From positions 248,001 to 312,000 of the IMG/VR virus record IMGVR_UViG_3300034073_005389: 64,000 nt of DNA, one strand, 5' to 3'. Positions 3,346 through 51,684 of the stretch are shown here, one piece after another. Under the pieces are notes generated by a model that worked only from the letters and a program-made list of their open reading frames with translations, was not told where the DNA came from and searched no databases. The position numbers and the translations under genes are program-made. How positions within the stretch are numbered: the first letter of the stretch is position 1; each line of letters begins with the position of its first letter.

Positions 3346-3621
3346 TGGCTCCGACTCCAGGATTCGGACCTGGGACCCGAGAGTTACAATCCTACTTCGG
3401 CTTTCGCCGCCCTCTAAATTGAGGTTCGTAGTCTGGACTATCCCATCACCCGTTCTGGGTGGATCCATTATAGTCTCTGCACCTTCCCTTATCGGGCTTG
3501 GCTCAGGATTGCCATATCTTGCGATGAAGGGTTCCCTGAATTTCGGATCTTTTACACCAATTATCCCTAACTGGCGCTGCCACTAACAGCTCTCTGCTAC
3601 TACCAACTGAGCTAAGTCGGA
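3346..3621 (-). tRNA. trnN: tRNA-Asn(GUU), intron-containing (exons 3586-3621 and 3346-3386), CCA encoded
   Basis: Joined exons give TCCGACT/AGTCGGA acceptor stem, G73-CCA, GAGAG/CTCTC anticodon stem and loop CTGT|TAA. Confidence 0.95.
3387..3585 (-). mobile_element. Group I intron (IC3-like, 199 nt) between tRNA positions 35 and 36
   Basis: Core elements AAUUCAGGGAAC, AAUCCUGAGC, GUGCAGAGACUA and GAUAGUCC; P1 GCUGU/GCAGC with U.G at the splice site; P3 GAUCC/GGAUC; P8 CACCC/GGGUG; GAAA-capped P9; terminal G. Confidence 0.93.
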
Positions 3622-3635
3622 AAAACTTACAACTA

Positions 3636-4298
3636 CTATATATTGTATTTCTCTTTTATTTTTTTAATAAAAGCATAGGTAGTGGATTTTGATCTATTAT
3701 ATCTTAATGCTATTTCTTTTACAGACATAGACTTTATTATGTCTATCATGATCTCATCACTATCCCACACAGATTTATATATCACCTCATCGCTACATTT
3801 TCTTGAACAAAAATTTCTTTTATTTTCAGCAGACTTATATACTTTAATTTCTTTTTCGCAATTAGAACATTTCTTGAAAACTGATCCTATATCAATCTTT
3901 TTTTCTGGAACAATTTTTCTTAAATTTTCATAAGTCTTTTCATTATTAATTTTATCTAAAATGTCATGAACTTCTCCATGACAATTTGAACATAATAATT
4001 CACACTTATCTAATTCTAATTTAATTTTTTCCCAAGATCTAATATTTGGATTAGAGATAGTAAAATCTTTTTGCTGCGGATCAATATGATGAAAAACTAA
4101 AGATCGTATTGATTTAGAATATCCGCATTTACTACATGCGCCGCCTTTATACTCTATAGCTTTTAATTTTAAAGCTCTACGACTTTCACTTATTCTCCAA
4201 CGTAAATAAATCTTTCTCTCTGAAGTTAATTTCCTTTTTGTCATAATAGTATGACAATTTATGTATACAGCTAAGCTATATCGTAAAATTTTTATCAC
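3636..4298 (-). CDS. Free-standing HNH endonuclease with zinc fingers (start may be 4244)
   Basis: CSKCGY...LVFHHIDP...CELLCSNCHGEVH HNH motif, a second CxxC...FCSRKC finger and a C-terminal HTH-like segment. Confidence 0.85.
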   Translation of the reverse strand: MIKILRYSLAVYINCHTIMTKRKLTSERKIYLRWRISESRRALKLKAIEYKGGACSKCGYSKSIRSLVFHHIDPQQKDFTISNPNIRSWEKIKLELDKCELLCSNCHGEVHDILDKINNEKTYENLRKIVPEKKIDIGSVFKKCSNCEKEIKVYKSAENKRNFCSRKCSDEVIYKSVWDSDEIMIDIIKSMSVKEIALRYNRSKSTTYAFIKKIKEKYNI

Positions 4299-31101: not shown

Positions 31102-31740
31102 CTAATCCAAGTTAATATAAACTACTATAGTATTTTCTGATGAAGCAAAAGAATACAAAGAAGAACTTGGCTCCCATTCTTCTCCAGCAGCAAAAGCCAT
31201 TATTTCCATAAAGTCTAAAGGCTCATCCCACTCCAAAGAAGCTTTTTTCTTTCTTGGGTCTTCCATGCCCTCATATTTTCTTTTATAGTATTCGCTATCA
31301 ATGGCTTTTTGAGCATCAAATTTGTCTATTAACTTTAATTGAATTCTTCGACTATATTTACCCGCACAAGATCTAGAACAAAAGGGACCACTTTTGTTCT
31401 TTTTAGCTTTATCACGAATTAATCTAGGAGACCTTTCAAATTCTTTATCACACCATGCACAGTTAAATTTAACCATTTTTACACGGCGAGTATCATTGGC
31501 ACTATGCTCTTTACGAGGAACTAGTCTTAAATTACTAATATCATTGTTATCAAAATTAGAATCCCAGTGGTCCACTGTTTCTTTGTCAGGGTGTAATTTC
31601 CTGCCAAGATGAAGTTCCATAACCCATTTAGGGTATGAAACAGTGCGGCGTTTACCTTTACGGTCCACCACAATAACTATTTTTCTATTATCTTGTCTAG
31701 TATAGGGTCCCCATACTTTAAACTTATCTGCATATGCCAT
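31102..31740 (-). CDS. HNH endonuclease with zinc finger
   Basis: VMELHLGRKL...VDHWDSNFDNNDISNL; CAWC...FCSRSC. Confidence 0.82.
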   Translation of the reverse strand: MAYADKFKVWGPYTRQDNRKIVIVVDRKGKRRTVSYPKWVMELHLGRKLHPDKETVDHWDSNFDNNDISNLRLVPRKEHSANDTRRVKMVKFNCAWCDKEFERSPRLIRDKAKKNKSGPFCSRSCAGKYSRRIQLKLIDKFDAQKAIDSEYYKRKYEGMEDPRKKKASLEWDEPLDFMEIMAFAAGEEWEPSSSLYSFASSENTIVVYINLD

Positions 31741-46099: not shown

Positions 46100-47650
46100 T
46101 TATTGAATTGACTTCATTGTCGGAAATAGAATTACATCTCTAATAGAAGCTGCATTAGTAAGCAACATAAACAATCGATCTAGTCCAATTCCAAATCCAA
46201 TGGCAGGTGGCATACCATACTGCAAAGCAGTTACATAGTCAGCATCAAAATCCATTGCATCCTTACTGTTATCTGCAAGCTGTTCCTTAAACCGGAGTTC
46301 TTGTTCCGTTGGATCATTCAACTCCTGAAAAGCATTGCACAATTCACGACCATCTACGAATAATTCAAATCGATCACAGAAAGATGAGTTACTATCCTTA
46401 GATCTTGCCAAAGGACAAATATCCTTTGGATAGTCAGTAATAAATACAGGAACAGAATACTTGTTATCCGAGGTACGATAATCCTGAGTTAAAAAAGGCT
46501 CAGCCATATATTCAAAGAAAGTACAAATAACTTGACCCATAGACTTAGCCTTAGTTACTTCTGACCACATCTCTTCCATATCAATCTTCCGATTTACATG
46601 ATGAGACAACTGCTCATAACTAACTCCAGACTTAGTAATATGAAGCTTTACCCCTAGCTTTTCAGCGGCATTATGCACCGCTTGAAGCATAGTAACCTGT
46701 ACTGGATTACTAAATGTAAATGTTCTATTTTCCTTCCACGCAAGATAAATTGGAAGAATGTTCTTTGGTAGATGCTTTTCTAAATACATTTCCACATGCG
46801 CAAACATGCTAGTAGTTCTTTCGATTAGCTTTGGAAAATTACCATAAGCCTCGTAGAACTCCATCATAGTAAACTCTGGATTATGTCGAGTAGATAATCC
46901 TTCATTTCTATAATTTCTACCAATCTCAAAAACCTTATCCATACCGCCTACCAGTAAACGCTTTAGATAAAGTTCTGGAGCAATACGCAGAAACAAATCC
47001 ATATCCAAGGCATTATGATGAGTAGTAAAAGGCTTTGCGTTAGCTCCGCTACTAACAGTATTAAGAGTGCTGGTTTCTACTTCTAAAAAACCTTCACGCT
47101 CCATGTAATCGCGGATTCCACGCAAAGCATAACTACGCACTACGAAAACTGCACGACTTTCTTCTGAAGAAAGAAGATCAAGATATCGTTGGCGATACTT
47201 AGTTTCGGTATCAGAAATACCAGCAAACTTTTCTGGCATTGGTCGGTGAGACTTAGTAAGTAGTCTCCAATTTAGAAGCAAAAGACTTTTTTCGCTAGTC
47301 TTACTGAGACAAAGCTTGCCTTCTACTTCGATAATATCACCAAGATCCATAAGGCGAATATTTTGGAAATCAGAACAAGCAGCCTTACTGATAATAAGCT
47401 GAATAGAGCCGGTACTATCATACATTGTTACAAATGCAATCGAACCTCCCTTTCTAAAAGTTTGGATACGACCACGAGTAACAACCGACTCTCCTAAATC
47501 ATCTGGATTAATAGAAATAGGAGTATTATCACTAAACTGACAAAGCAACGTTCCGATTTCAACTCCAGTGGAGTTAGCAAGTGGATAAGTTCCGCTATTT
47601 ACTTCTTCATGCTTAGAGATACGGGTACGAATTAAATCTTGTTCAGACAT
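46100..47650 (-). CDS. lysS: Lysyl-tRNA synthetase, class II
   Basis: OB anticodon domain, YRQRYLDL, LRIAPELYLKRL, FRN-type motif 2 (YRNEG...HNPEFTM) and motif 3 GFGIGLDRL. Confidence 0.96.
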   Translation of the reverse strand: MSEQDLIRTRISKHEEVNSGTYPLANSTGVEIGTLLCQFSDNTPISINPDDLGESVVTRGRIQTFRKGGSIAFVTMYDSTGSIQLIISKAACSDFQNIRLMDLGDIIEVEGKLCLSKTSEKSLLLLNWRLLTKSHRPMPEKFAGISDTETKYRQRYLDLLSSEESRAVFVVRSYALRGIRDYMEREGFLEVETSTLNTVSSGANAKPFTTHHNALDMDLFLRIAPELYLKRLLVGGMDKVFEIGRNYRNEGLSTRHNPEFTMMEFYEAYGNFPKLIERTTSMFAHVEMYLEKHLPKNILPIYLAWKENRTFTFSNPVQVTMLQAVHNAAEKLGVKLHITKSGVSYEQLSHHVNRKIDMEEMWSEVTKAKSMGQVICTFFEYMAEPFLTQDYRTSDNKYSVPVFITDYPKDICPLARSKDSNSSFCDRFELFVDGRELCNAFQELNDPTEQELRFKEQLADNSKDAMDFDADYVTALQYGMPPAIGFGIGLDRLFMLLTNAASIRDVILFPTMKSIQ

Positions 47651-47656
47651 ATTTCC

Positions 47657-47881
47657 TCAATTAATCATATTCTTATCGTCAGAAGAATCTTCACCACTAA
47701 GAATATCATTTACCGAATTATCAACAGTACGCAGCAAATCCTCAGCAGCATCCATTAAAAGGGTACTTAGACTTAAGCACTCAGCTGAATTAAGAACTCC
47801 AAGAGAAATAGTAACTTCCTCTGTCTCAAGGGAAACTTCAACTTGCTCATCTGCAATTTTATTAATGGTAATATTAATCAT
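47657..47881 (-). CDS. Small acidic hypothetical protein
   Basis: 74 aa within the operon. Confidence 0.55.
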   Translation of the reverse strand: MINITINKIADEQVEVSLETEEVTISLGVLNSAECLSLSTLLMDAAEDLLRTVDNSVNDILSGEDSSDDKNMIN

Positions 47882-47884
47882 AAT

Positions 47885-48283
47885 TTACACCGTGTAAACA
47901 CGGTCCTTATCTTGTTGTGGGAACCAGATTCCGTACTGATTATCGTTAATAGTATAATAAACTTTTTTAACTCGATGTGCTCGAATTTTCAATTGACAAT
48001 CTGGACAAGGACGAGCCATAGCGAGGGAACGATCCTTGCGCAAAACACGAGAAACAAAAATCACACCATCTTTGCCTAGCTTACGAAGCAAACGACTTTC
48101 GGCATGAGAATTAACATTTACATTGGACATTTGCACAGAAGAAGAAAAAGAAACGGCGCCATTTCTAGAAGAAACCATGACGCCATCTTTTCTAATTCCA
48201 ATTGCTCCCAACCAAAAACTGCGAAGATCCGCACTATTAGTGGGAAGTGCTAGTCCCGCCGCCTCCAACAGAAAATCCAGCAT
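47885..48283 (-). CDS. Zn-dependent cytidine-deaminase-fold protein
   Basis: HAE...PCPDC signature. Confidence 0.85.
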   Translation of the reverse strand: MLDFLLEAAGLALPTNSADLRSFWLGAIGIRKDGVMVSSRNGAVSFSSSVQMSNVNVNSHAESRLLRKLGKDGVIFVSRVLRKDRSLAMARPCPDCQLKIRAHRVKKVYYTINDNQYGIWFPQQDKDRVYTV

Positions 48284-48611
48284 CTACGACCTCACAAGTA
48301 CAATTGCACTCAGATAAACACATACCCTTAGCTTCTGAATAAAATCCACCACAACCACAGTCTGATAGTAATGTTGGTTGTTGACCTGTACAAACAAAGC
48401 AATCACTTGAACTTACTGGTGCTGTCGCAGACACAGATGCAGATGGAGCACTATGCGAAACTGCTGGAGCACCATGAGACATTACAGATGATAACTCTGC
48501 GCTAAGATGAGTGCTAGGTTTGTTAGTTCCACCACCTAGATTAGCGTCTTGTGATGTACATGAGATTACAAAAAATGTTAGTGTTGTTAGAAATTTTTTC
48601 ATTTTATTCAC
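48237..48611 (-). CDS. Cys-rich lipoprotein-like protein
   Basis: MKKFLTTLTFFVISC lipobox-like start; CFVC...CGC...C.C.C. Confidence 0.5.
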   Translation of the reverse strand: MNKMKKFLTTLTFFVISCTSQDANLGGGTNKPSTHLSAELSSVMSHGAPAVSHSAPSASVSATAPVSSSDCFVCTGQQPTLLSDCGCGGFYSEAKGMCLSECNCTCEVVDAGFSVGGGGTSTSH

Positions 48612-49209
48612 CTTTAAATTGTTTTAAAATTTGTTTACGAATTACTTTTGGAAACCCTGGATTCAATTCTAAATATTTTGGCAAGATTTCATGCCGAATC
48701 TTATTTCTCATATATTTAGTATCTTGATTACTAGGATCTTCAATCCAAGGAACTTGGTGTCGTAAGCACCAATTTACCATTTCACTTTTAAGATTAAGTA
48801 AAAATGGTCGAATAATCAAACCGTTAATATATGGAATTAATCTAGGCAATCCATGAGCAGAAGTAAAAATCCAATTTTCCATCTGATCATTTAAATTATG
48901 AGCCATCACCATAGGAAGCTGGAATTTCTTAAACCAATTATATCTTTGGTTTCTCCAATATTCTTCCCAAGACTCTTGTTTAGATTTATCGGAACATATT
49001 GTGCCAATTTCTAAATCAATTTTGTGCTGACTACAATAATCTTGAATAAATGTCTGAGCTAAAGCTCCGAACTCAGTACCATGATTAAAGTAACATACTT
49101 TGATTTCTCTTCCACCATTTTTAAGAAAATGTAGTGCCGCCATACTATCAGCACCACCAGAACAAGCCAAAGTAACTTGATATGGAATTTTATTTAGTAA
49201 TCGCAACAT
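48604..49209 (-). CDS. tilS: tRNA(Ile)-lysidine synthase, catalytic domain only
   Basis: ACSGGADSM, FNHG, RNQRY, AHNLNDQME, IIRPFL, WIEDPSN and MRNKIRHEILP. Confidence 0.93.
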   Translation of the reverse strand: MLRLLNKIPYQVTLACSGGADSMAALHFLKNGGREIKVCYFNHGTEFGALAQTFIQDYCSQHKIDLEIGTICSDKSKQESWEEYWRNQRYNWFKKFQLPMVMAHNLNDQMENWIFTSAHGLPRLIPYINGLIIRPFLLNLKSEMVNWCLRHQVPWIEDPSNQDTKYMRNKIRHEILPKYLELNPGFPKVIRKQILKQFKGE

Positions 49210-49216
49210 AATACGA

Positions 49217-50080
49217 ATGCACATATATCTGCATATATGTATGTCTGAAATTAAATGTAAATTTTGCGAAAAAATATTATTATCTAATATGTCTAGATCA
49301 ATACATCAATTAAGATGTAATCTTAATCCAGAATTTGACCCAAACAGATTTACAACACCATCTAGAAGAGGAAAGTATAAGTCAAACTCTCCATCTAAAA
49401 GCACATTAAAAAAACAAGAAAGTAAAACCCGACTAAAAAAACAATTAGATACAAAAAAATTTGTATGCCAATATTGTTGGCATGACATTACGACTTCAAC
49501 AAAACTGCCGCCTAAATTTTATTTTAAAGGCTTAAGGCTACATGAATCTATGTGCGGTAAAAATCCGCATGGGAAATCAGTAATGTATCCAACTAAACAT
49601 TCAGATAAAACTATCGAAAAATTAAAAGAGTCAGGTAAAAAAAGAGTTTGGACTCAGGAACAAAAAATAAAACTTAGTGAAAGTATGAAAAATGCTGTTA
49701 AAAAGCATCCGGAATCATACACAAATTCTAATAGAGGAAGGGTTAAACAAATAATATTTGATAATATCAAATTTCATGGTAAATGGGAAGTTGCTTTCTA
49801 TAAATGGTCAAAAGAAAACAATATTGAGATAAAAAAAAATATTGAAGGATTTAACTATTATTGGAGAGGTAATAGAACATATTTTCCTGATTTTTATCTT
49901 CCAAAATTAGAATTATTTATTGAAATAAAAGGATATGAAACATATCGAGACCAAGCAAAATGGTCTGCATTTCCTAAGAAACTTATAGTAATTAGAAAAG
50001 AACAAATTTTACAAATTAATAAAGGAATATTTCCTGGAATAGAAAGCATTCCTTTAACTAGTCCGACAAACAGGACTTGA
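49217..50080 (+). CDS. Free-standing PD-(D/E)xK endonuclease with zinc fingers and NUMOD3-like segment (start may be 49241)
   Basis: KWEVAF...YFPDFYL...FIEIKG; CxxC...HxxxC fingers; KHSDKTIEKL. Confidence 0.8.
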   Translation: MHIYLHICMSEIKCKFCEKILLSNMSRSIHQLRCNLNPEFDPNRFTTPSRRGKYKSNSPSKSTLKKQESKTRLKKQLDTKKFVCQYCWHDITTSTKLPPKFYFKGLRLHESMCGKNPHGKSVMYPTKHSDKTIEKLKESGKKRVWTQEQKIKLSESMKNAVKKHPESYTNSNRGRVKQIIFDNIKFHGKWEVAFYKWSKENNIEIKKNIEGFNYYWRGNRTYFPDFYLPKLELFIEIKGYETYRDQAKWSAFPKKLIVIRKEQILQINKGIFPGIESIPLTSPTNRT

Positions 50081-50373
50081 ACCTGTAACCACGCGATTAT
50101 GCTTACCACTACGATTTTCATCGCCTTTTTAAAGTTTGTGGTCTGGACTATACCTTCCCTCTCGGGTCTAACGTCTAGTCTCTACACCTTCTCAAATTTA
50201 TTGAGCTTGGCTCGGGATTAGCATATAAATTTCTTTACTTAGCTTTCCCCGAATTTGTCAGATTCTACCAAGATGTTTCACTTGGCAACCCACGATAGTA
50301 TATCATGAACATATATTGTTTTTAGATATACAATCTTCGAGTCGCATGCTCTAACCAATTGAGCTATTGTCGG
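50062..50373 (-). tRNA. trnI: tRNA-Ile2(CAU), intron-containing (exons 50340-50373 and 50062-50101), CCA not encoded
   Basis: Joined exons give CCGACAA/TTGTCGG, A73 and GCGACT|CATAATCGC, the anticodon arm I recall from E. coli ileX; lacks the initiator features; adjacent to tilS. Confidence 0.88.
50102..50339 (-). mobile_element. Group I intron (IC3-like, 238 nt) between tRNA positions 33 and 34
   Basis: AAAUUCGGGGAA, AAUCCCGAGC, GUGUAGAGACUA and UAUAGUCC; P1 GCGACU/GGUUGC; P3 UCUGAC/GUUAGA; P8 CCC-GAGA-GGG; terminal G. Confidence 0.92.
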
Positions 50374-50421
50374 ATAAACTTTATTTCATCATCTCGATTT
50401 CGACGCTTACCTTGCCCCTCA

Positions 50422-50454
50422 CTTATAGTCGGGCTGGTTGCCCGATGGGCAACC
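50422..50454 (-). promoter_or_regulatory. Palindromic box GGTTGCCCATCGGGCAACC-N8-TATAAG, copy 1 (upstream of tRNA-Ile2)
   Basis: Perfect 8-bp stem with 3-nt loop; same box and spacing as copy 2. Confidence 0.6.
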
Positions 50455-50461
50455 GCAAGCT

Positions 50462-51684
50462 TTAGCTATCGATTTGTTGTAGCTTTTCAAAAAACTTAAT
50501 CACATTCTCTCTAGACAACTTATATAGATTACCTCCAAAATCTTTGGTATCCATATAATAATTATACTGAACCATATCGGTTATATTCTTAACCGGTCTA
50601 TAATCTTTGTCAAGATTAAAAAGAAAACTAAAGTCTGGAGACTTTACTAAATTACGTGTCGTAAGGGCATATATCATACCCTCTCCTTGTTTTAAAGGAG
50701 AAAATTTTTCCACACCCATTAAAGAAACAAGATAATAATCTTGTTGTGCATTTTCTGGATTAGATGAATTATTATAATGAAATTCGGCAGGAGTCACCCA
50801 AGCCACATAATTTTTAAAATGTGTATGACCCAAACATAACATAAATAAATCTTTCTACTTCATCAAAATCAATAATTTTCTACTTGCTCAACAATTTCTA
50901 ATTCTTGAAAAAATTCCTGCTCTACAGGGCGACCTTGGTCAATTGGTTCAATTCCACAATCTGTAGGAATTGCAATCAGCACAACTTGATTATTAATCAC
51001 TACTTCTTTGTAGTCAACAGGACAGCCCAATTCTTTAGGTAAAGATGATGAAAAATCCTCGGCAGAATCTTGAACAGTATCCTGCTCCAACTCCTCTGAT
51101 TCTGGTAACTCTTGGAAGTTATAACAACCAGTTAATACCAAACAAAGAATAAAAAAATGTCTCATGACTAAATACCAATTAATTAGTTAACTTAACTAAT
51201 CTCCTTTATTATTTTTTAAAAATTCAGTAGCAGATTTATTAATACGCTCTTCTCTTTTATCTTCTTGCTCTCTATAATGATCTTTACATAGCGTCATGTA
51301 CCAACTACCAAGAACTCTATTCTCTCCAGGAACACCACAAGTTTCACAAATATGAAAACTCATATTCTCTGCCATAGAAATGGCTCCAGAAATATAATCA
51401 TTGGTGCAGCTAGTGTAAAACCTAAGACCACCAAATTTTTCTTTAACTTGAACCGCAGTAAATAAATCTAACAAACTCTTATTAGTTTTATGATCAAAAT
51501 CTTTATTTACTGGAGAATCTGGATTACTAACTCTCCACTCAATATGTTCAAGATGAGATTCAATTATTGAGCATAGATTATCTATTATCTTATACCAACC
51601 AGAACCACACTCTATGTGTGTTAGATTTTTAAACACTCTAGGATACTTTTCCAGTAAAGTAGAATACCAAACTTCTTTAGTCAT
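50462..51684 (-). other. Three hypothetical ORFs (126, 98 lipoprotein-like, 162 aa)
   Basis: The 162-aa ORF carries the common phage motif QVKEKFGGLRFY...CETCG. Confidence 0.7.

What the first reader, a model, noticed from the sequence alone, without database searches (positions are those of the whole stretch)
49217..50080. Antisense PD-(D/E)xK nuclease whose last codons are the tRNA 3' end
Seen: the ORF ends ...TSPTNRT-stop, with TGA at 50078-50080 inside the tRNA T-arm on the opposite strand; its start faces the tilS start only about 30 bp away. Known: the cyanobacterial fMet intron (same 33/34 site) encodes the PD-(D/E)xK enzyme I-Ssp6803I. Inference: an external homing partner for this intron that inserted at the tRNA 3' boundary. 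Its transcript is antisense to the tRNA.
Basis: partly seen in the sequence, partly recalled or inferred. Interest (0 to 1): 0.6.

Follow-up and report, generated by a model that had tools for sequence, protein, structure and literature searches.

The report
Mobile nuclease gene beside phage tRNA
The ORF is a real, mobile "free-standing" homing-endonuclease gene, wedged between a phage isoleucine-type tRNA(CAU) gene and the tilS gene that modifies that tRNA. It belongs to a large undescribed nuclease family that sits next to, or inside, tRNA(CAU) genes in many phages.

Summary
A 279-aa ORF (49241-50080, +) ends 19 nt inside the 3' end of a minus-strand tRNA(CAU). Its TGA stop lies in the T-loop. 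Its start is 31 nt from the true tilS start (49209).

The tRNA carries a 238-nt ORF-less group I intron between U33 and C34. The protein has two CCHC zinc-finger-like motifs, NUMOD3-like helices and a canonical PD-(D/E)xK nuclease domain.

The ORF is an 843-bp insertion. Near-identical relatives join the tRNA 3' end to the tilS ATG through only 8-16 nt. Intron-less/ORF-less, intron+/ORF-less and intron+/ORF+ alleles all exist.

Of 68 non-redundant relatives (61 from IMG/VR, 7 from phage records and metagenome contigs), 53 end within 30 nt of, or overlap, an uninterrupted tRNA(CAU) gene. Six more abut an intron-bearing one. In Acinetobacter and Aeromonas phages the gene sits inside the anticodon itself.

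So the family homes to tRNA(CAU) genes, probably by cutting the anticodon loop. It is not proven, and it is not general, because most relatives sit beside uninterrupted tRNAs. There is no kinship with I-Ssp6803I.

The parts
48604..49209 (-). tilS (N-terminal PP-loop domain only, about 201 aa); true start ATG at 49209
   Evidence: TIGR02432 scores 120.8 bits against a cut-off of 93.6. Pfam PF01171 gives 1.4e-33. The start is fixed by the ORF-less alleles L004, L007 and L005.
49197..49202 (.). Cluster of 5 substitutions (tilS codons 3-5) relative to the ORF-less allele L004, lying 8-13 nt from the insertion point
   Evidence: The mismatch map shows 0 mismatches over 48629-49196 and then 5 within 6 nt. 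This reads as a co-conversion or target-immunity signature.
49210..50052 (+). The 843-bp insertion, absent from the ORF-less alleles; it carries the nuclease gene
   Evidence: L004 joins window 50053 directly to 49209. Contigs of runs X5, X8 and X7 skip it. The old 8-nt spacer survives at 50053-50060 with 3 changes.
49241..50080 (+). Free-standing homing-endonuclease-like ORF, 279 aa
   Evidence: P0001 matches at 100%. phrog_15137 'endonuclease' gives 1.3e-20. 63 homologues were found and 274 loci in IMG/VR.
49256..49318 (+). CCHC zinc-finger-like motif 1 (C6, C9, H22, C26)
   Evidence: The AF2 model has pLDDT 94-95 here. The family profile gives weak C2H2 zinc-finger PDB hits.
49466..49555 (+). 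CCHC zinc-finger-like motif 2 (C76, C79, H101, C105); present only in the closest relatives
49598..49699 (+). Two NUMOD3-like helical DNA-binding repeats (residues 120-153)
   Evidence: The sequence pattern and model helices 122-133 and 139-155 support this. Pfam NUMOD3 is precomputed for one homologue only (P0048) and is not called in this protein.
49733..50041 (+). PD-(D/E)xK nuclease domain; E183 (49787-89), D217 (49889-91), E228-x-K230 (49922-30)
   Evidence: Invariant columns are shown. Model pLDDT is above 93. VIA-align gives Z 7-7.7 to Vsr 1cw0, I-Bth0305I 3r3p and Bax1.
50042..50080 (+). Non-conserved tail (ESIPLTSPTNRT) read through the old spacer into the tRNA; the stop is borrowed from the T-loop
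   Evidence: Most homologues end at the GxFxGL motif. The closest antisense relatives have their own stop 6-13 nt before the tRNA.
50062..50101 (-). tRNA(CAU) 3' exon (C34 to discriminator A); no encoded CCA
   Evidence: It is 100% identical in L005, L004 and L007.
50102..50339 (-). ORF-less group I intron, 238 nt, inserted between U33 and C34. The internal guide GGUUGC (50290-50285) pairs with exon GCGACU, with a U.G pair at the splice site. The terminal G (omega-G) is at 50102.
   Evidence: Rfam gives 52.1 bits. The intron-less allele L007 fixes the ends. Four homologous introns show 18 of 42 pairs with compensatory changes.
50340..50373 (-). tRNA(CAU) 5' exon (positions 1-33)

Best explanation
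The ORF is a mobile, free-standing homing endonuclease gene. It belongs to an uncharacterised modular family: zinc finger(s), NUMOD3-like helices and a canonical PD-(D/E)xK nuclease.

The habitat of this family is the tRNA(CAU) gene of phages. In an ancestor of this 361-kb phage, the tRNA(CAU) and tilS formed one unit only 8-16 nt apart. Given the downstream tilS, this tRNA is probably the lysidine-dependent tRNA-Ile2.

The nuclease cassette was copied into that spacer, abutting the tilS ATG and facing the tRNA. It has no stop codon of its own there. Translation therefore runs through the old spacer and six codons of the tRNA 3' end to a TGA in the T-loop. That overlap is an accident of insertion, not a functional fusion.

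During mixed infection the enzyme most probably cuts tRNA(CAU) loci that lack it, in or next to the anticodon loop, about 40 bp from its own gene. Recombinational repair then copies the cassette into the cut genome. Its own tRNA allele is split at U33/C34 by the ORF-less group I intron. That split would make the allele uncuttable and would let the intron be dragged along (collaborative homing).

What is shown:
- insertion polymorphism
- nuclease motif and fold
- family-wide linkage to tRNA(CAU)
- insertion of relatives inside the anticodon
- the optional intron

What is inferred:
- that the enzyme cleaves at all
- the position of the cut
- protection by the intron

My confidence by step:
- about 0.85 that this is a homing-type mobile nuclease
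- about 0.65 that its target lies in the tRNA(CAU) gene
- about 0.4 that the intron is its immunity device and partner
For: (1) Empty sites exist.
- L004 is 97.5-99.3% identical and lacks exactly 49210-50052.
- L005 and L099 also lack the insertion.
- Freshwater runs from two other studies carry the same ORF-less junction. Run X7 holds both forms.

(2) Eight substitutions hug the insertion point, 5 at 49197-49202 and 3 at 50057-50060. There are none in the next ~570 nt on the left or ~680 nt on the right. In X7 and L005 a mosaic breakpoint lies exactly at this site.

(3) All 16 invariant family residues are present, including the E...PD...ExK motif. The fold is PD-(D/E)xK.

(4) Of 68 non-redundant relatives (61 from IMG/VR, 7 from phage records and metagenome contigs), 53 have a tRNA(CAT) within 30 nt of, or overlapping, the ORF's 3' end. 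tRNA(CAT) makes up 75 of 359 tRNAs in those loci. Six further loci abut an intron-bearing tRNA(CAU).

(5) Acinetobacter phage AM101 and 8 other records carry the gene inside the anticodon of a tRNA(CAU). That tRNA is intact in DP45, Konradin, Lazarus and others at 95-99% identity. The same holds in Aeromonas phage AsFcp_2 and in L046. Relic 5' half-tRNAs ending in the anticodon loop lie upstream of the gene in 5 loci.

(6) Introns at two different sites (33/34 and 36/37) occur in tRNA(CAU) genes next to family members. The rate is 6 of about 60, against 4 of about 305 for other tRNAs (odds ratio 8.4, p=0.002).

(7) The exons of the intron-less L007 allele are identical to the window's. Only the intron distinguishes them at the presumed target.

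(8) A second pair occurs in the same window: an HNH endonuclease ORF ends 13 nt from another intron-bearing tRNA. No other tRNA of the genome has a detected nuclease neighbour.
Against: - No cleavage, expression or splicing data exist, and no RNA run holds the locus.
- Most family members sit next to an uninterrupted tRNA(CAU). This includes the relatives with the same tilS-ORF-tRNA order (L017, L020, L083). An intron is therefore not needed for self-immunity.
- Intron+/ORF-less alleles dominate among close relatives (L004, L005, L099, X5, X7, X8). Intron and ORF thus assort independently.
- The substitution clusters and the mosaic breakpoint fit a target at the tRNA-tilS junction equally well.
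- The anticodon-inserted relatives share only about 46% identity over the nuclease half and have different N-terminal modules. Their specificity need not carry over.
- The intron-enrichment test used a model built mostly from the introns being counted.
Confidence: 0.5

Rival explanations
1. It is the same mobile homing endonuclease, but its recognition site is its own insertion site: the tRNA 3' end, the spacer and the first tilS codons. The intron is an unrelated passenger of the tRNA. Immunity comes from the insertion splitting the site and from the flanking substitutions.
For: - Eight substitutions lie within 13 nt of the insertion point, with none in the ~570 nt beyond them on the tilS side or the ~680 nt beyond them on the tRNA side.
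- A mosaic breakpoint lies exactly there in X7 and L005.
- Intron+/ORF-less alleles are abundant and would be the natural recipients.
- Relatives with the same gene order have no intron.
- SegB of T4 recognises the T-arm motif of tRNA genes (PMC2330249). The T-arm is exactly what this ORF overlaps.
Against: - Family members lie at the 5' end, at the 3' end or inside tRNA(CAU) genes, with unrelated flanking genes. The common denominator is therefore the tRNA, not tilS.
- The clean insertion cases are in the anticodon.
- The intron enrichment next to family members would be left unexplained.
Confidence: 0.3
2. The gene is a decaying or domesticated relic. It is either an inactive former homing endonuclease that is merely tolerated, or a nuclease now used by the phage for another DNA transaction. 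It no longer homes.
For: - The native stop is lost and the ORF runs into the tRNA.
- Identity to the L003 copy (59%) is lower than for the neighbouring tilS (74%).
- A decayed copy exists in Aeromonas phage AsFcp_2.
- There is no expression evidence.
Against: - The ORF is full length, with every invariant catalytic and structural residue.
- ORF+ and ORF- forms co-occur in one lake sample at about 99% identity. This indicates ongoing gain or loss.
- A useful phage function would not be optional among near-identical genomes.
Confidence: 0.12
3. The function is at the RNA level. Either the ORF's transcript acts as an antisense regulator of tRNA(CAU)/tilS expression, or the protein is an RNA endonuclease acting on tRNA precursors.
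For: - Transcription of the ORF and the tRNA is convergent, and the ORF overlaps the tRNA 3' end by 19 nt.
- The insertion separates tilS from the tRNA promoter.
- tRNA-splicing endonucleases appear among weak structural neighbours, at Z 4.5-6.
Against: - The catalytic set is the metal-dependent E/D/E/K of DNA nucleases, not the Tyr/His/Lys of splicing endonucleases.
- Most relatives lie on the same strand as the tRNA.
- ORF-less alleles show the tRNA-tilS unit works without it.
- Promoter and terminator matches are no more frequent than in shuffled sequence.
Confidence: 0.05

Closest known systems
F-CphI and the psbA intron of cyanophage S-PM2 (collaborative homing); also T4 MobE with the defunct I-TevIII intron
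   Same: [quoted passage not shown] Intron-less alleles exist in related phages. In the known cases the enzyme cuts the intron-less allele at the intron insertion site and the intron blocks self-cleavage (PMC6083498, PMC2790892, PMC3984707).
   Different: - The nuclease family differs: F-CphI uses the Endo VII motif and MobE is HNH, whereas this is PD-(D/E)xK.
- The host gene here is a tRNA, not a protein gene.
- Cleavage at the intron site is only inferred here.
- Most relatives of this enzyme live beside uninterrupted targets.
T4 SegB
   Same: It is a free-standing homing endonuclease lodged in a phage tRNA gene cluster. Its recognition site includes conserved tRNA-gene sequence, and it drives inheritance of the surrounding tRNA genes (PMC2330249). 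In coliphage IME341 a relative of the present ORF lies between tRNA(CAT) and tRNA-Arg(TCT) in the T4-type tRNA region.
   Different: SegB is a GIY-YIG enzyme that recognises the T-arm motif common to many tRNAs. The present family is PD-(D/E)xK and is tied to one anticodon class (CAU).
I-Ssp6803I (intron-encoded, tRNA-fMet of Synechocystis)
   Same: It has PD-(D/E)xK chemistry. Its target is the anticodon region of a tRNA gene with a CAU anticodon, and it is associated with a group I intron in that loop (PMC3384342, PMC1995217).
   Different: - No sequence similarity is detectable, and it is not among the top 50 structural neighbours.
- I-Ssp6803I is a 150-aa single-domain tetramer encoded inside the intron.
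- This protein is a 279-aa modular protein encoded outside the intron.
I-Bth0305I (EDxHD family) and Vsr
   Same: These are the nearest solved folds for the nuclease domain, with Z 7.4 and 7.7. I-Bth0305I is a phage homing endonuclease with a modular build.
   Different: The active site here is the classical E...PD...ExK, not EDxHD. I-Bth0305I is intron-encoded in recA.

Membership tests
PD-(D/E)xK nuclease superfamily | Conserved acidic/acidic/lysine catalytic motif (E...PD...(D/E)xK) | tested here: met
   E183, P216, D217, E228 and K230 are invariant in 63 homologues and present in the window protein.
PD-(D/E)xK nuclease superfamily | Restriction-endonuclease-like alpha/beta core fold | tested here: met
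   The AF2 domain has pLDDT above 93. VIA-align gives Z 7.7 to Vsr, 7.4 to I-Bth0305I, 7.0 to Bax1 and 6.8 to TnsA. Foldseek probabilities are 0.97-0.99 but E-values only 0.01-0.06. This is moderate support, not strong.
Free-standing homing endonuclease gene | Optional gene at a fixed site between conserved genes: presence/absence between otherwise near-identical genomes | tested here: met
   L004 at 97.5-99.3% identity lacks exactly 843 bp. The same junction is seen in runs X5 and X8, and both forms occur in X7.
Free-standing homing endonuclease gene | Site-specific double-strand cleavage of the allele lacking the gene, and its super-Mendelian inheritance | not testable with these tools
   This needs a protein assay and mixed infections.
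Free-standing homing endonuclease gene | Co-conversion of flanking markers around the insertion | tested here: inconclusive
   Eight substitutions hug the insertion point and a mosaic breakpoint lies there. The donor is unknown, so tract and immunity mutations cannot be told apart.
Collaborative homing pair (free-standing endonuclease plus ORF-less intron) | Endonuclease gene adjacent to a gene with an ORF-less self-splicing intron; intron-less alleles exist in relatives | tested here: met
   The intron is 238 nt with no ORF and matches the Rfam model. Four homologous introns show covariation. The intron-less allele is L007. The gene lies 40 nt from the insertion site.
Collaborative homing pair (free-standing endonuclease plus ORF-less intron) | The enzyme cuts the intron-less allele at or near the intron insertion site, and the intron prevents cutting | not testable with these tools
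   Support is indirect only. Relatives are inserted in the anticodon and introns are enriched. Against it, there are many relatives that carry the ORF beside an intron-less tRNA.
I-Ssp6803I family | Sequence or close structural similarity to I-Ssp6803I; small single-domain intron-encoded protein | tested here: not met
   There is no PDB hit at E<=10 with either the sequence or the family profile. It is absent from the top 50 of 48,161 chains. This protein is 279 aa, multi-domain and encoded outside the intron.
EDxHD (I-Bth0305I) family | EDxHD active-site motif | tested here: not met
   The protein sequence has no such motif. The invariant residues form E...PD...ExK.
Pfam DUF7487 (PF24308) | Score at or above the curated cut-off (27 bits) | tested here: not met
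   The score is 19.5 bits, E 0.001, over residues 205-262 only. Four homologues carry a precomputed PF24308 hit. The protein is related to this family but below threshold.
tRNA-Ile2 (lysidine-dependent, CAU) | CAU anticodon, not initiator-like, functionally paired with TilS | tested here: inconclusive
   The 1-72 pair is C-G and the anticodon stem lacks the three G-C pairs of initiators (read). tilS lies 8-16 nt downstream on the same strand in ORF-less alleles. No isotype classifier was available.

The most novel reading that the evidence does not exclude
This is one snapshot of a previously unrecognised arms race in phages. A whole PD-(D/E)xK homing-endonuclease lineage specialises on the anticodon loop of tRNA(CAU) genes. 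It takes three forms:
- It splits the tRNA outright (Acinetobacter and Aeromonas phages).
- It inserts with a replacement 5' half-tRNA behind it, so that the gene is healed. The relic halves in L042, L054, L055, L060 and L085 suggest this.
- It parks just outside the gene.

Group I introns have been recruited at least twice, at sites 33/34 and 36/37. They serve as shields for that loop and as hitch-hikers on the enzyme.

On this reading the window shows the free-standing stage of the pathway that leads to intron-encoded enzymes such as I-Ssp6803I, played out on a tRNA gene.
Probability: 0.3. Interest if true: 0.8.

Novelty: new variant of a known kind. Interest (0 to 1): 0.62.

Why it matters
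Only one PD-(D/E)xK homing endonuclease (I-Ssp6803I) is characterised. Only two cases of collaborative homing between a free-standing endonuclease and an ORF-less intron are known.

Here a large family is tied to one class of tRNA gene. There are at least 274 loci in IMG/VR plus cultured T4-like phages. The family has no literature in the library searched.

Natural alleles exist for every state: intron-less, intron only, intron plus nuclease, and nuclease inside the anticodon. That makes several questions directly testable in cultivable Acinetobacter and E. coli phages:
- the origin of mobile introns
- how such enzymes avoid cutting their own genome
- how phage tRNA sets are shuffled

The family also offers a new modular scaffold (zinc finger, NUMOD3-like helices and a classical restriction-type nuclease) with a long natural target.

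Tried and rejected
- Single-protein and two-sequence scans of IMG/VR for the ORF and for tilS found nothing. Only the 63-sequence profile worked.
- The phage collection has no near-identical DNA.
- ARAGORN's default run missed the split tRNA. With introns allowed it found the boundaries but mis-called the anticodon as Leu(caa).
- ARAGORN's 'tRNA-Arg with 1127-nt intron' at genome 345994-347211 got no Rfam intron match and is rejected.
- The first corrected-geometry script had an ORF-end bug; it read through stops. This was fixed.
- Foldseek against PDB gave no hit at E<=0.001.
- Sequence and profile searches of PDB gave no nuclease hit better than E 0.22, to T7 endonuclease I.
- Promoter and terminator scans were no better than shuffled sequence, so nothing is claimed about transcription.
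- No RNA run holds the locus, so the antisense-transcript idea and splicing remain untested.
- The intron status of the second ORF+ lineage (L003) could not be settled. Its contig ends in the T-arm, and a pattern search for its tRNA found nothing.
- The paper that would give the I-Ssp6803I intron position is not held.
- The 305-aa ORF occupying the same site in L100 matched no nuclease family.
- The big representative-protein search and the complex predictor were not used. Relatives were plentiful, and no protein-protein claim is made.

Full report
**Observation**

The window lies at 248001-312000 of a 361,490-bp viral record from IMG/VR, with 33% G+C. An ORF at 49217-50080 (+) is present. A gene caller and all homologues use the ATG at 49241, giving 279 aa (P0001).

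The minus strand carries a tRNA that ARAGORN's default run missed:
- 5' exon 50373-50340, ending at U33
- a 238-nt group I intron at 50339-50102 (Rfam RF00028, 52.1 bits against a cut-off of 50)
- 3' exon 50101-50062

The anticodon is CAU. The splice junction is not a guess. A related contig (L007) carries the same 74 nt uninterrupted. The exon end GCGACU can pair with GGUUGC at 50290-50285, with a U.G pair at the splice site, and the intron ends in G (read). Four homologous introns share a core in which 18 of 42 predicted pairs show compensatory changes.

The ORF's TGA (50078-80) is the complement of T-loop bases. ORF and tRNA overlap by 19 nt.

**The neighbours**

The gene to the left is a short TilS made of the N-terminal PP-loop domain (TIGR02432, 120.8 bits against a cut-off of 93.6). 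In alleles without the ORF, the tRNA 3' end lies 8-16 nt upstream of the tilS ATG on the same strand. This fixes the tilS start at 49209. It also shows that tRNA(CAU) and its likely modifying enzyme are one unit.

The tRNA is not initiator-like. Together with tilS, this points to the lysidine-dependent tRNA-Ile2, but no isotype classifier was available.

**The protein**

It has these parts:
- two CCHC zinc-finger-like motifs (residues 6-26 and 76-105)
- two NUMOD3-like helices (residues 120-153)
- a C-terminal domain in which E183, P216-D217 and E228-x-K230 are invariant across 63 homologues

The AlphaFold model, built with that alignment, has pLDDT 84.8 overall and above 93 in the nuclease domain. 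The nearest solved folds are Vsr (Z 7.7), the I-Bth0305I catalytic domain (7.4), Bax1 (7.0) and TnsA (6.8). Foldseek points to the same set but weakly. PHROG 15137 'endonuclease' matches at 1.3e-20. Pfam DUF7487 matches below its cut-off.

I-Ssp6803I does not appear in sequence, profile or fold searches.

Most homologues end at a GxFxGL motif, which corresponds to residue 267 here. The last 12 residues, including the six codons taken from the tRNA, are therefore an unconserved read-through.

**It is an insertion**

Contig L004 is 97.5-99.3% identical to the window. It joins window 50053 directly to 49209 and so lacks 843 bp. Its junction is letter-for-letter that of L007, so it is an ancestral-type empty site and not a deletion scar.

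L005 (about 80% identical) and L099 (tilS 81% identical) are also empty. Contigs of freshwater runs from two further studies (X5, X8) carry the L004 junction. Lake run X7 holds both an empty allele and fragments of the ORF with 2 mismatches each.

Against L004, the window has no mismatch over 48629-49196 and none over 50061-50741. It has 5 within 49197-49202 and 3 within 50057-50060, hugging the insertion point.

In X7 and L005 the tRNA-intron side is nearly identical to the window (1 mismatch in 477 nt), while the tilS side is only about 80-83% identical. A recombination breakpoint therefore lies exactly here.

The allele states seen are:

| State | Where seen |
|---|---|
| intron-less, ORF-less | L007 |
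| intron+, ORF-less | L004, L005, L099, X5, X7, X8 |
| intron+, ORF+ | window |
| ORF+, intron unknown | L003 (59% identical protein, same overlap geometry) |

**The family and tRNA(CAU)**

A profile scan of IMG/VR found 274 loci, and the best 80 were kept. These 80 loci, together with 7 loci from phage records and metagenome contigs, reduce to 68 non-redundant loci at 90% identity.
- In 49 of the 68, a tRNA(CAT) on the same strand begins within 30 nt of the ORF's stop or overlaps it. The usual overlap is exactly 10 nt, so the stop is the TAG formed by tRNA positions 8-10.
- In 4, the tRNA is antisense at its 3' end, as in the window.

tRNA(CAT) makes up 75 of the 359 tRNAs in those loci. Most 'exceptions' turned out to be intron-bearing tRNA(CAU) genes that ARAGORN had missed.

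In cultured phages the picture is sharper. In Acinetobacter phage AM101 and eight other records, the gene lies inside the anticodon of a tRNA(CAU). That tRNA is intact in DP45, Konradin, Lazarus and others at 95-99% identity. The junction is ambiguous by the dinucleotide AT: insertion is either after C34 or after U36.

Aeromonas phage AsFcp_2 (a decayed copy) and L046 show the same split. In five loci a relic 5' half-tRNA ending in the anticodon loop lies about 30 nt upstream of the gene, while a complete tRNA(CAU) follows it.

tilS accompanies the pair in L017, L020, L083 and L084, which have the window's gene order. It also does so in L067, L073 and L074, where all genes are on one strand.

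**Introns**

Next to family members, tRNA(CAU) genes carry introns at two different sites:
- U33/C34: window, L021, L049, L095
- after U36: L044, L052, L087

Among antisense arrangements with known status, 4 of 8 have an intron. With an nhmmer model of nine introns, 6 of about 60 nuclease-adjacent tRNA(CAU) genes carry an intron, against 4 of about 305 other tRNAs (odds ratio 8.4, p=0.002). The model is biased towards the introns being counted, so this is a lead rather than proof.

The genome has only two introns. The second, at window 3413-3623, sits in a Thr-like tRNA that begins 13 nt after an HNH endonuclease ORF (3636-4298). The few other nuclease genes detected in the genome are not next to tRNAs.

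**Mechanism**

The best reading is a free-standing homing endonuclease of a family dedicated to tRNA(CAU) genes. The clean insertion cases put the family's homing site in the anticodon loop.

In the window the exons are identical to those of the intron-less L007 allele. If the enzyme cuts there, only the intron protects its own genome. The intron, 40 nt away, would then be co-converted. This is the collaborative-homing scheme shown for F-CphI/psbA and MobE/nrdB (PMC6083498, PMC2790892, PMC3984707).

That last step is inference and is weakened by three points:
- There are many relatives that carry the ORF beside an intron-less tRNA.
- Intron+/ORF-less alleles are abundant.
- The flanking substitutions and the breakpoint are equally well explained by a target at the tRNA-tilS junction, in the manner of SegB, which reads the T-arm motif (PMC2330249).

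**Verdict**

This is a new variant of a known kind: an undescribed PD-(D/E)xK homing-endonuclease family with a tRNA(CAU) habitat. I found no paper on DUF7487 or on such a family in the library searched.

Noticed in passing
window 3346-4298 (-): A second group I intron (RF00028, 52.7 bits, 3413-3623) lies in a Thr(TGT)-like tRNA (ARAGORN 3346-3621). It is preceded, 13 nt upstream on the same strand, by a 220-aa HNH endonuclease ORF with a C-terminal HTH (phrog_2255, 4.5e-27). The full-window Rfam scan at gathering threshold missed this intron. I could not place its splice junction cleanly.
   Followed up: partly
window 46100-49209 (-): This is a translation-related gene block downstream of the tRNA. 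It holds the short TilS, a small ORF, a deaminase-like ORF (47885-48283, phrog_174 dCMP deaminase 3.8e-07) and a lysyl-tRNA-synthetase-like gene (46100-47650; in relative L005 the homologue carries Pfam tRNA-synt_2). Short TilS proteins of about 200 aa occur on many 100-290-kb metagenomic contigs.
   Followed up: partly
L009 2258-3000 (Acinetobacter phage AM101, NC_049511) versus L098 235-308 (phage DP45): A perfect tRNA(CAU) cloverleaf is split in the anticodon by 666 nt that are almost entirely the nuclease ORF, with no room for a ribozyme. The record annotates only an 'endonuclease' between tRNA genes. Whether any tRNA is made from it is unknown.
   Followed up: yes
L042 172-200, L054 2752-2788, L055 2832-2868, L060 2874-2906, L085 2935-2968: Relic 5' halves of tRNA(CAU), ending in the anticodon loop, lie about 30 nt upstream of the nuclease gene, while an intact tRNA(CAU) follows it. 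This suggests a cassette that inserts in the anticodon and brings a replacement half-tRNA.
   Followed up: partly
49 of the 68 non-redundant family loci, e.g. L022-L024, L027, L035-L039: The nuclease ORF typically overlaps the downstream tRNA by exactly 10 nt and stops at TAG, which is tRNA positions U8-A9-G10. RNase P processing of the tRNA would cut such an mRNA before its stop codon.
   Followed up: no
L054 442-727, L056 3900-4197, L095 245-523: Phage tRNA-Leu(UAA)-like genes carry group I introns between U34 and A35. L045 4204-4507 has an intron in a Lys-like tRNA. tRNA introns therefore seem common in these uncultured phages.
   Followed up: no
L100 1413-2433: In a relative with tilS 60% identical, the same tRNA(CAU)-tilS gap holds a different antisense ORF of 305 aa with no recognisable family. 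The site may be a shared landing place for several elements.
   Followed up: partly
window 50055-50531 versus 48629-49212, in run X7: One lake-water contig is 99.8% identical to the window on the tRNA-intron side and about 83% identical on the tilS side. The tRNA-intron segment thus appears to move between diverged phage backgrounds.
   Followed up: partly
genome 345994-347211 (L097): ARAGORN calls a tRNA-Arg(TCG) with a 1127-nt intron. Rfam finds no intron there, only a weak tRNA match elsewhere in the stretch. This is probably a false call.
   Followed up: yes
window 31501-31626 (-); genome 115013, 144946, 156216-158263: Other nuclease genes of homing type occur in the genome: HNH_3, GIY-YIG and HNH copies, some with internal stops. 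None is next to a tRNA.
   Followed up: no
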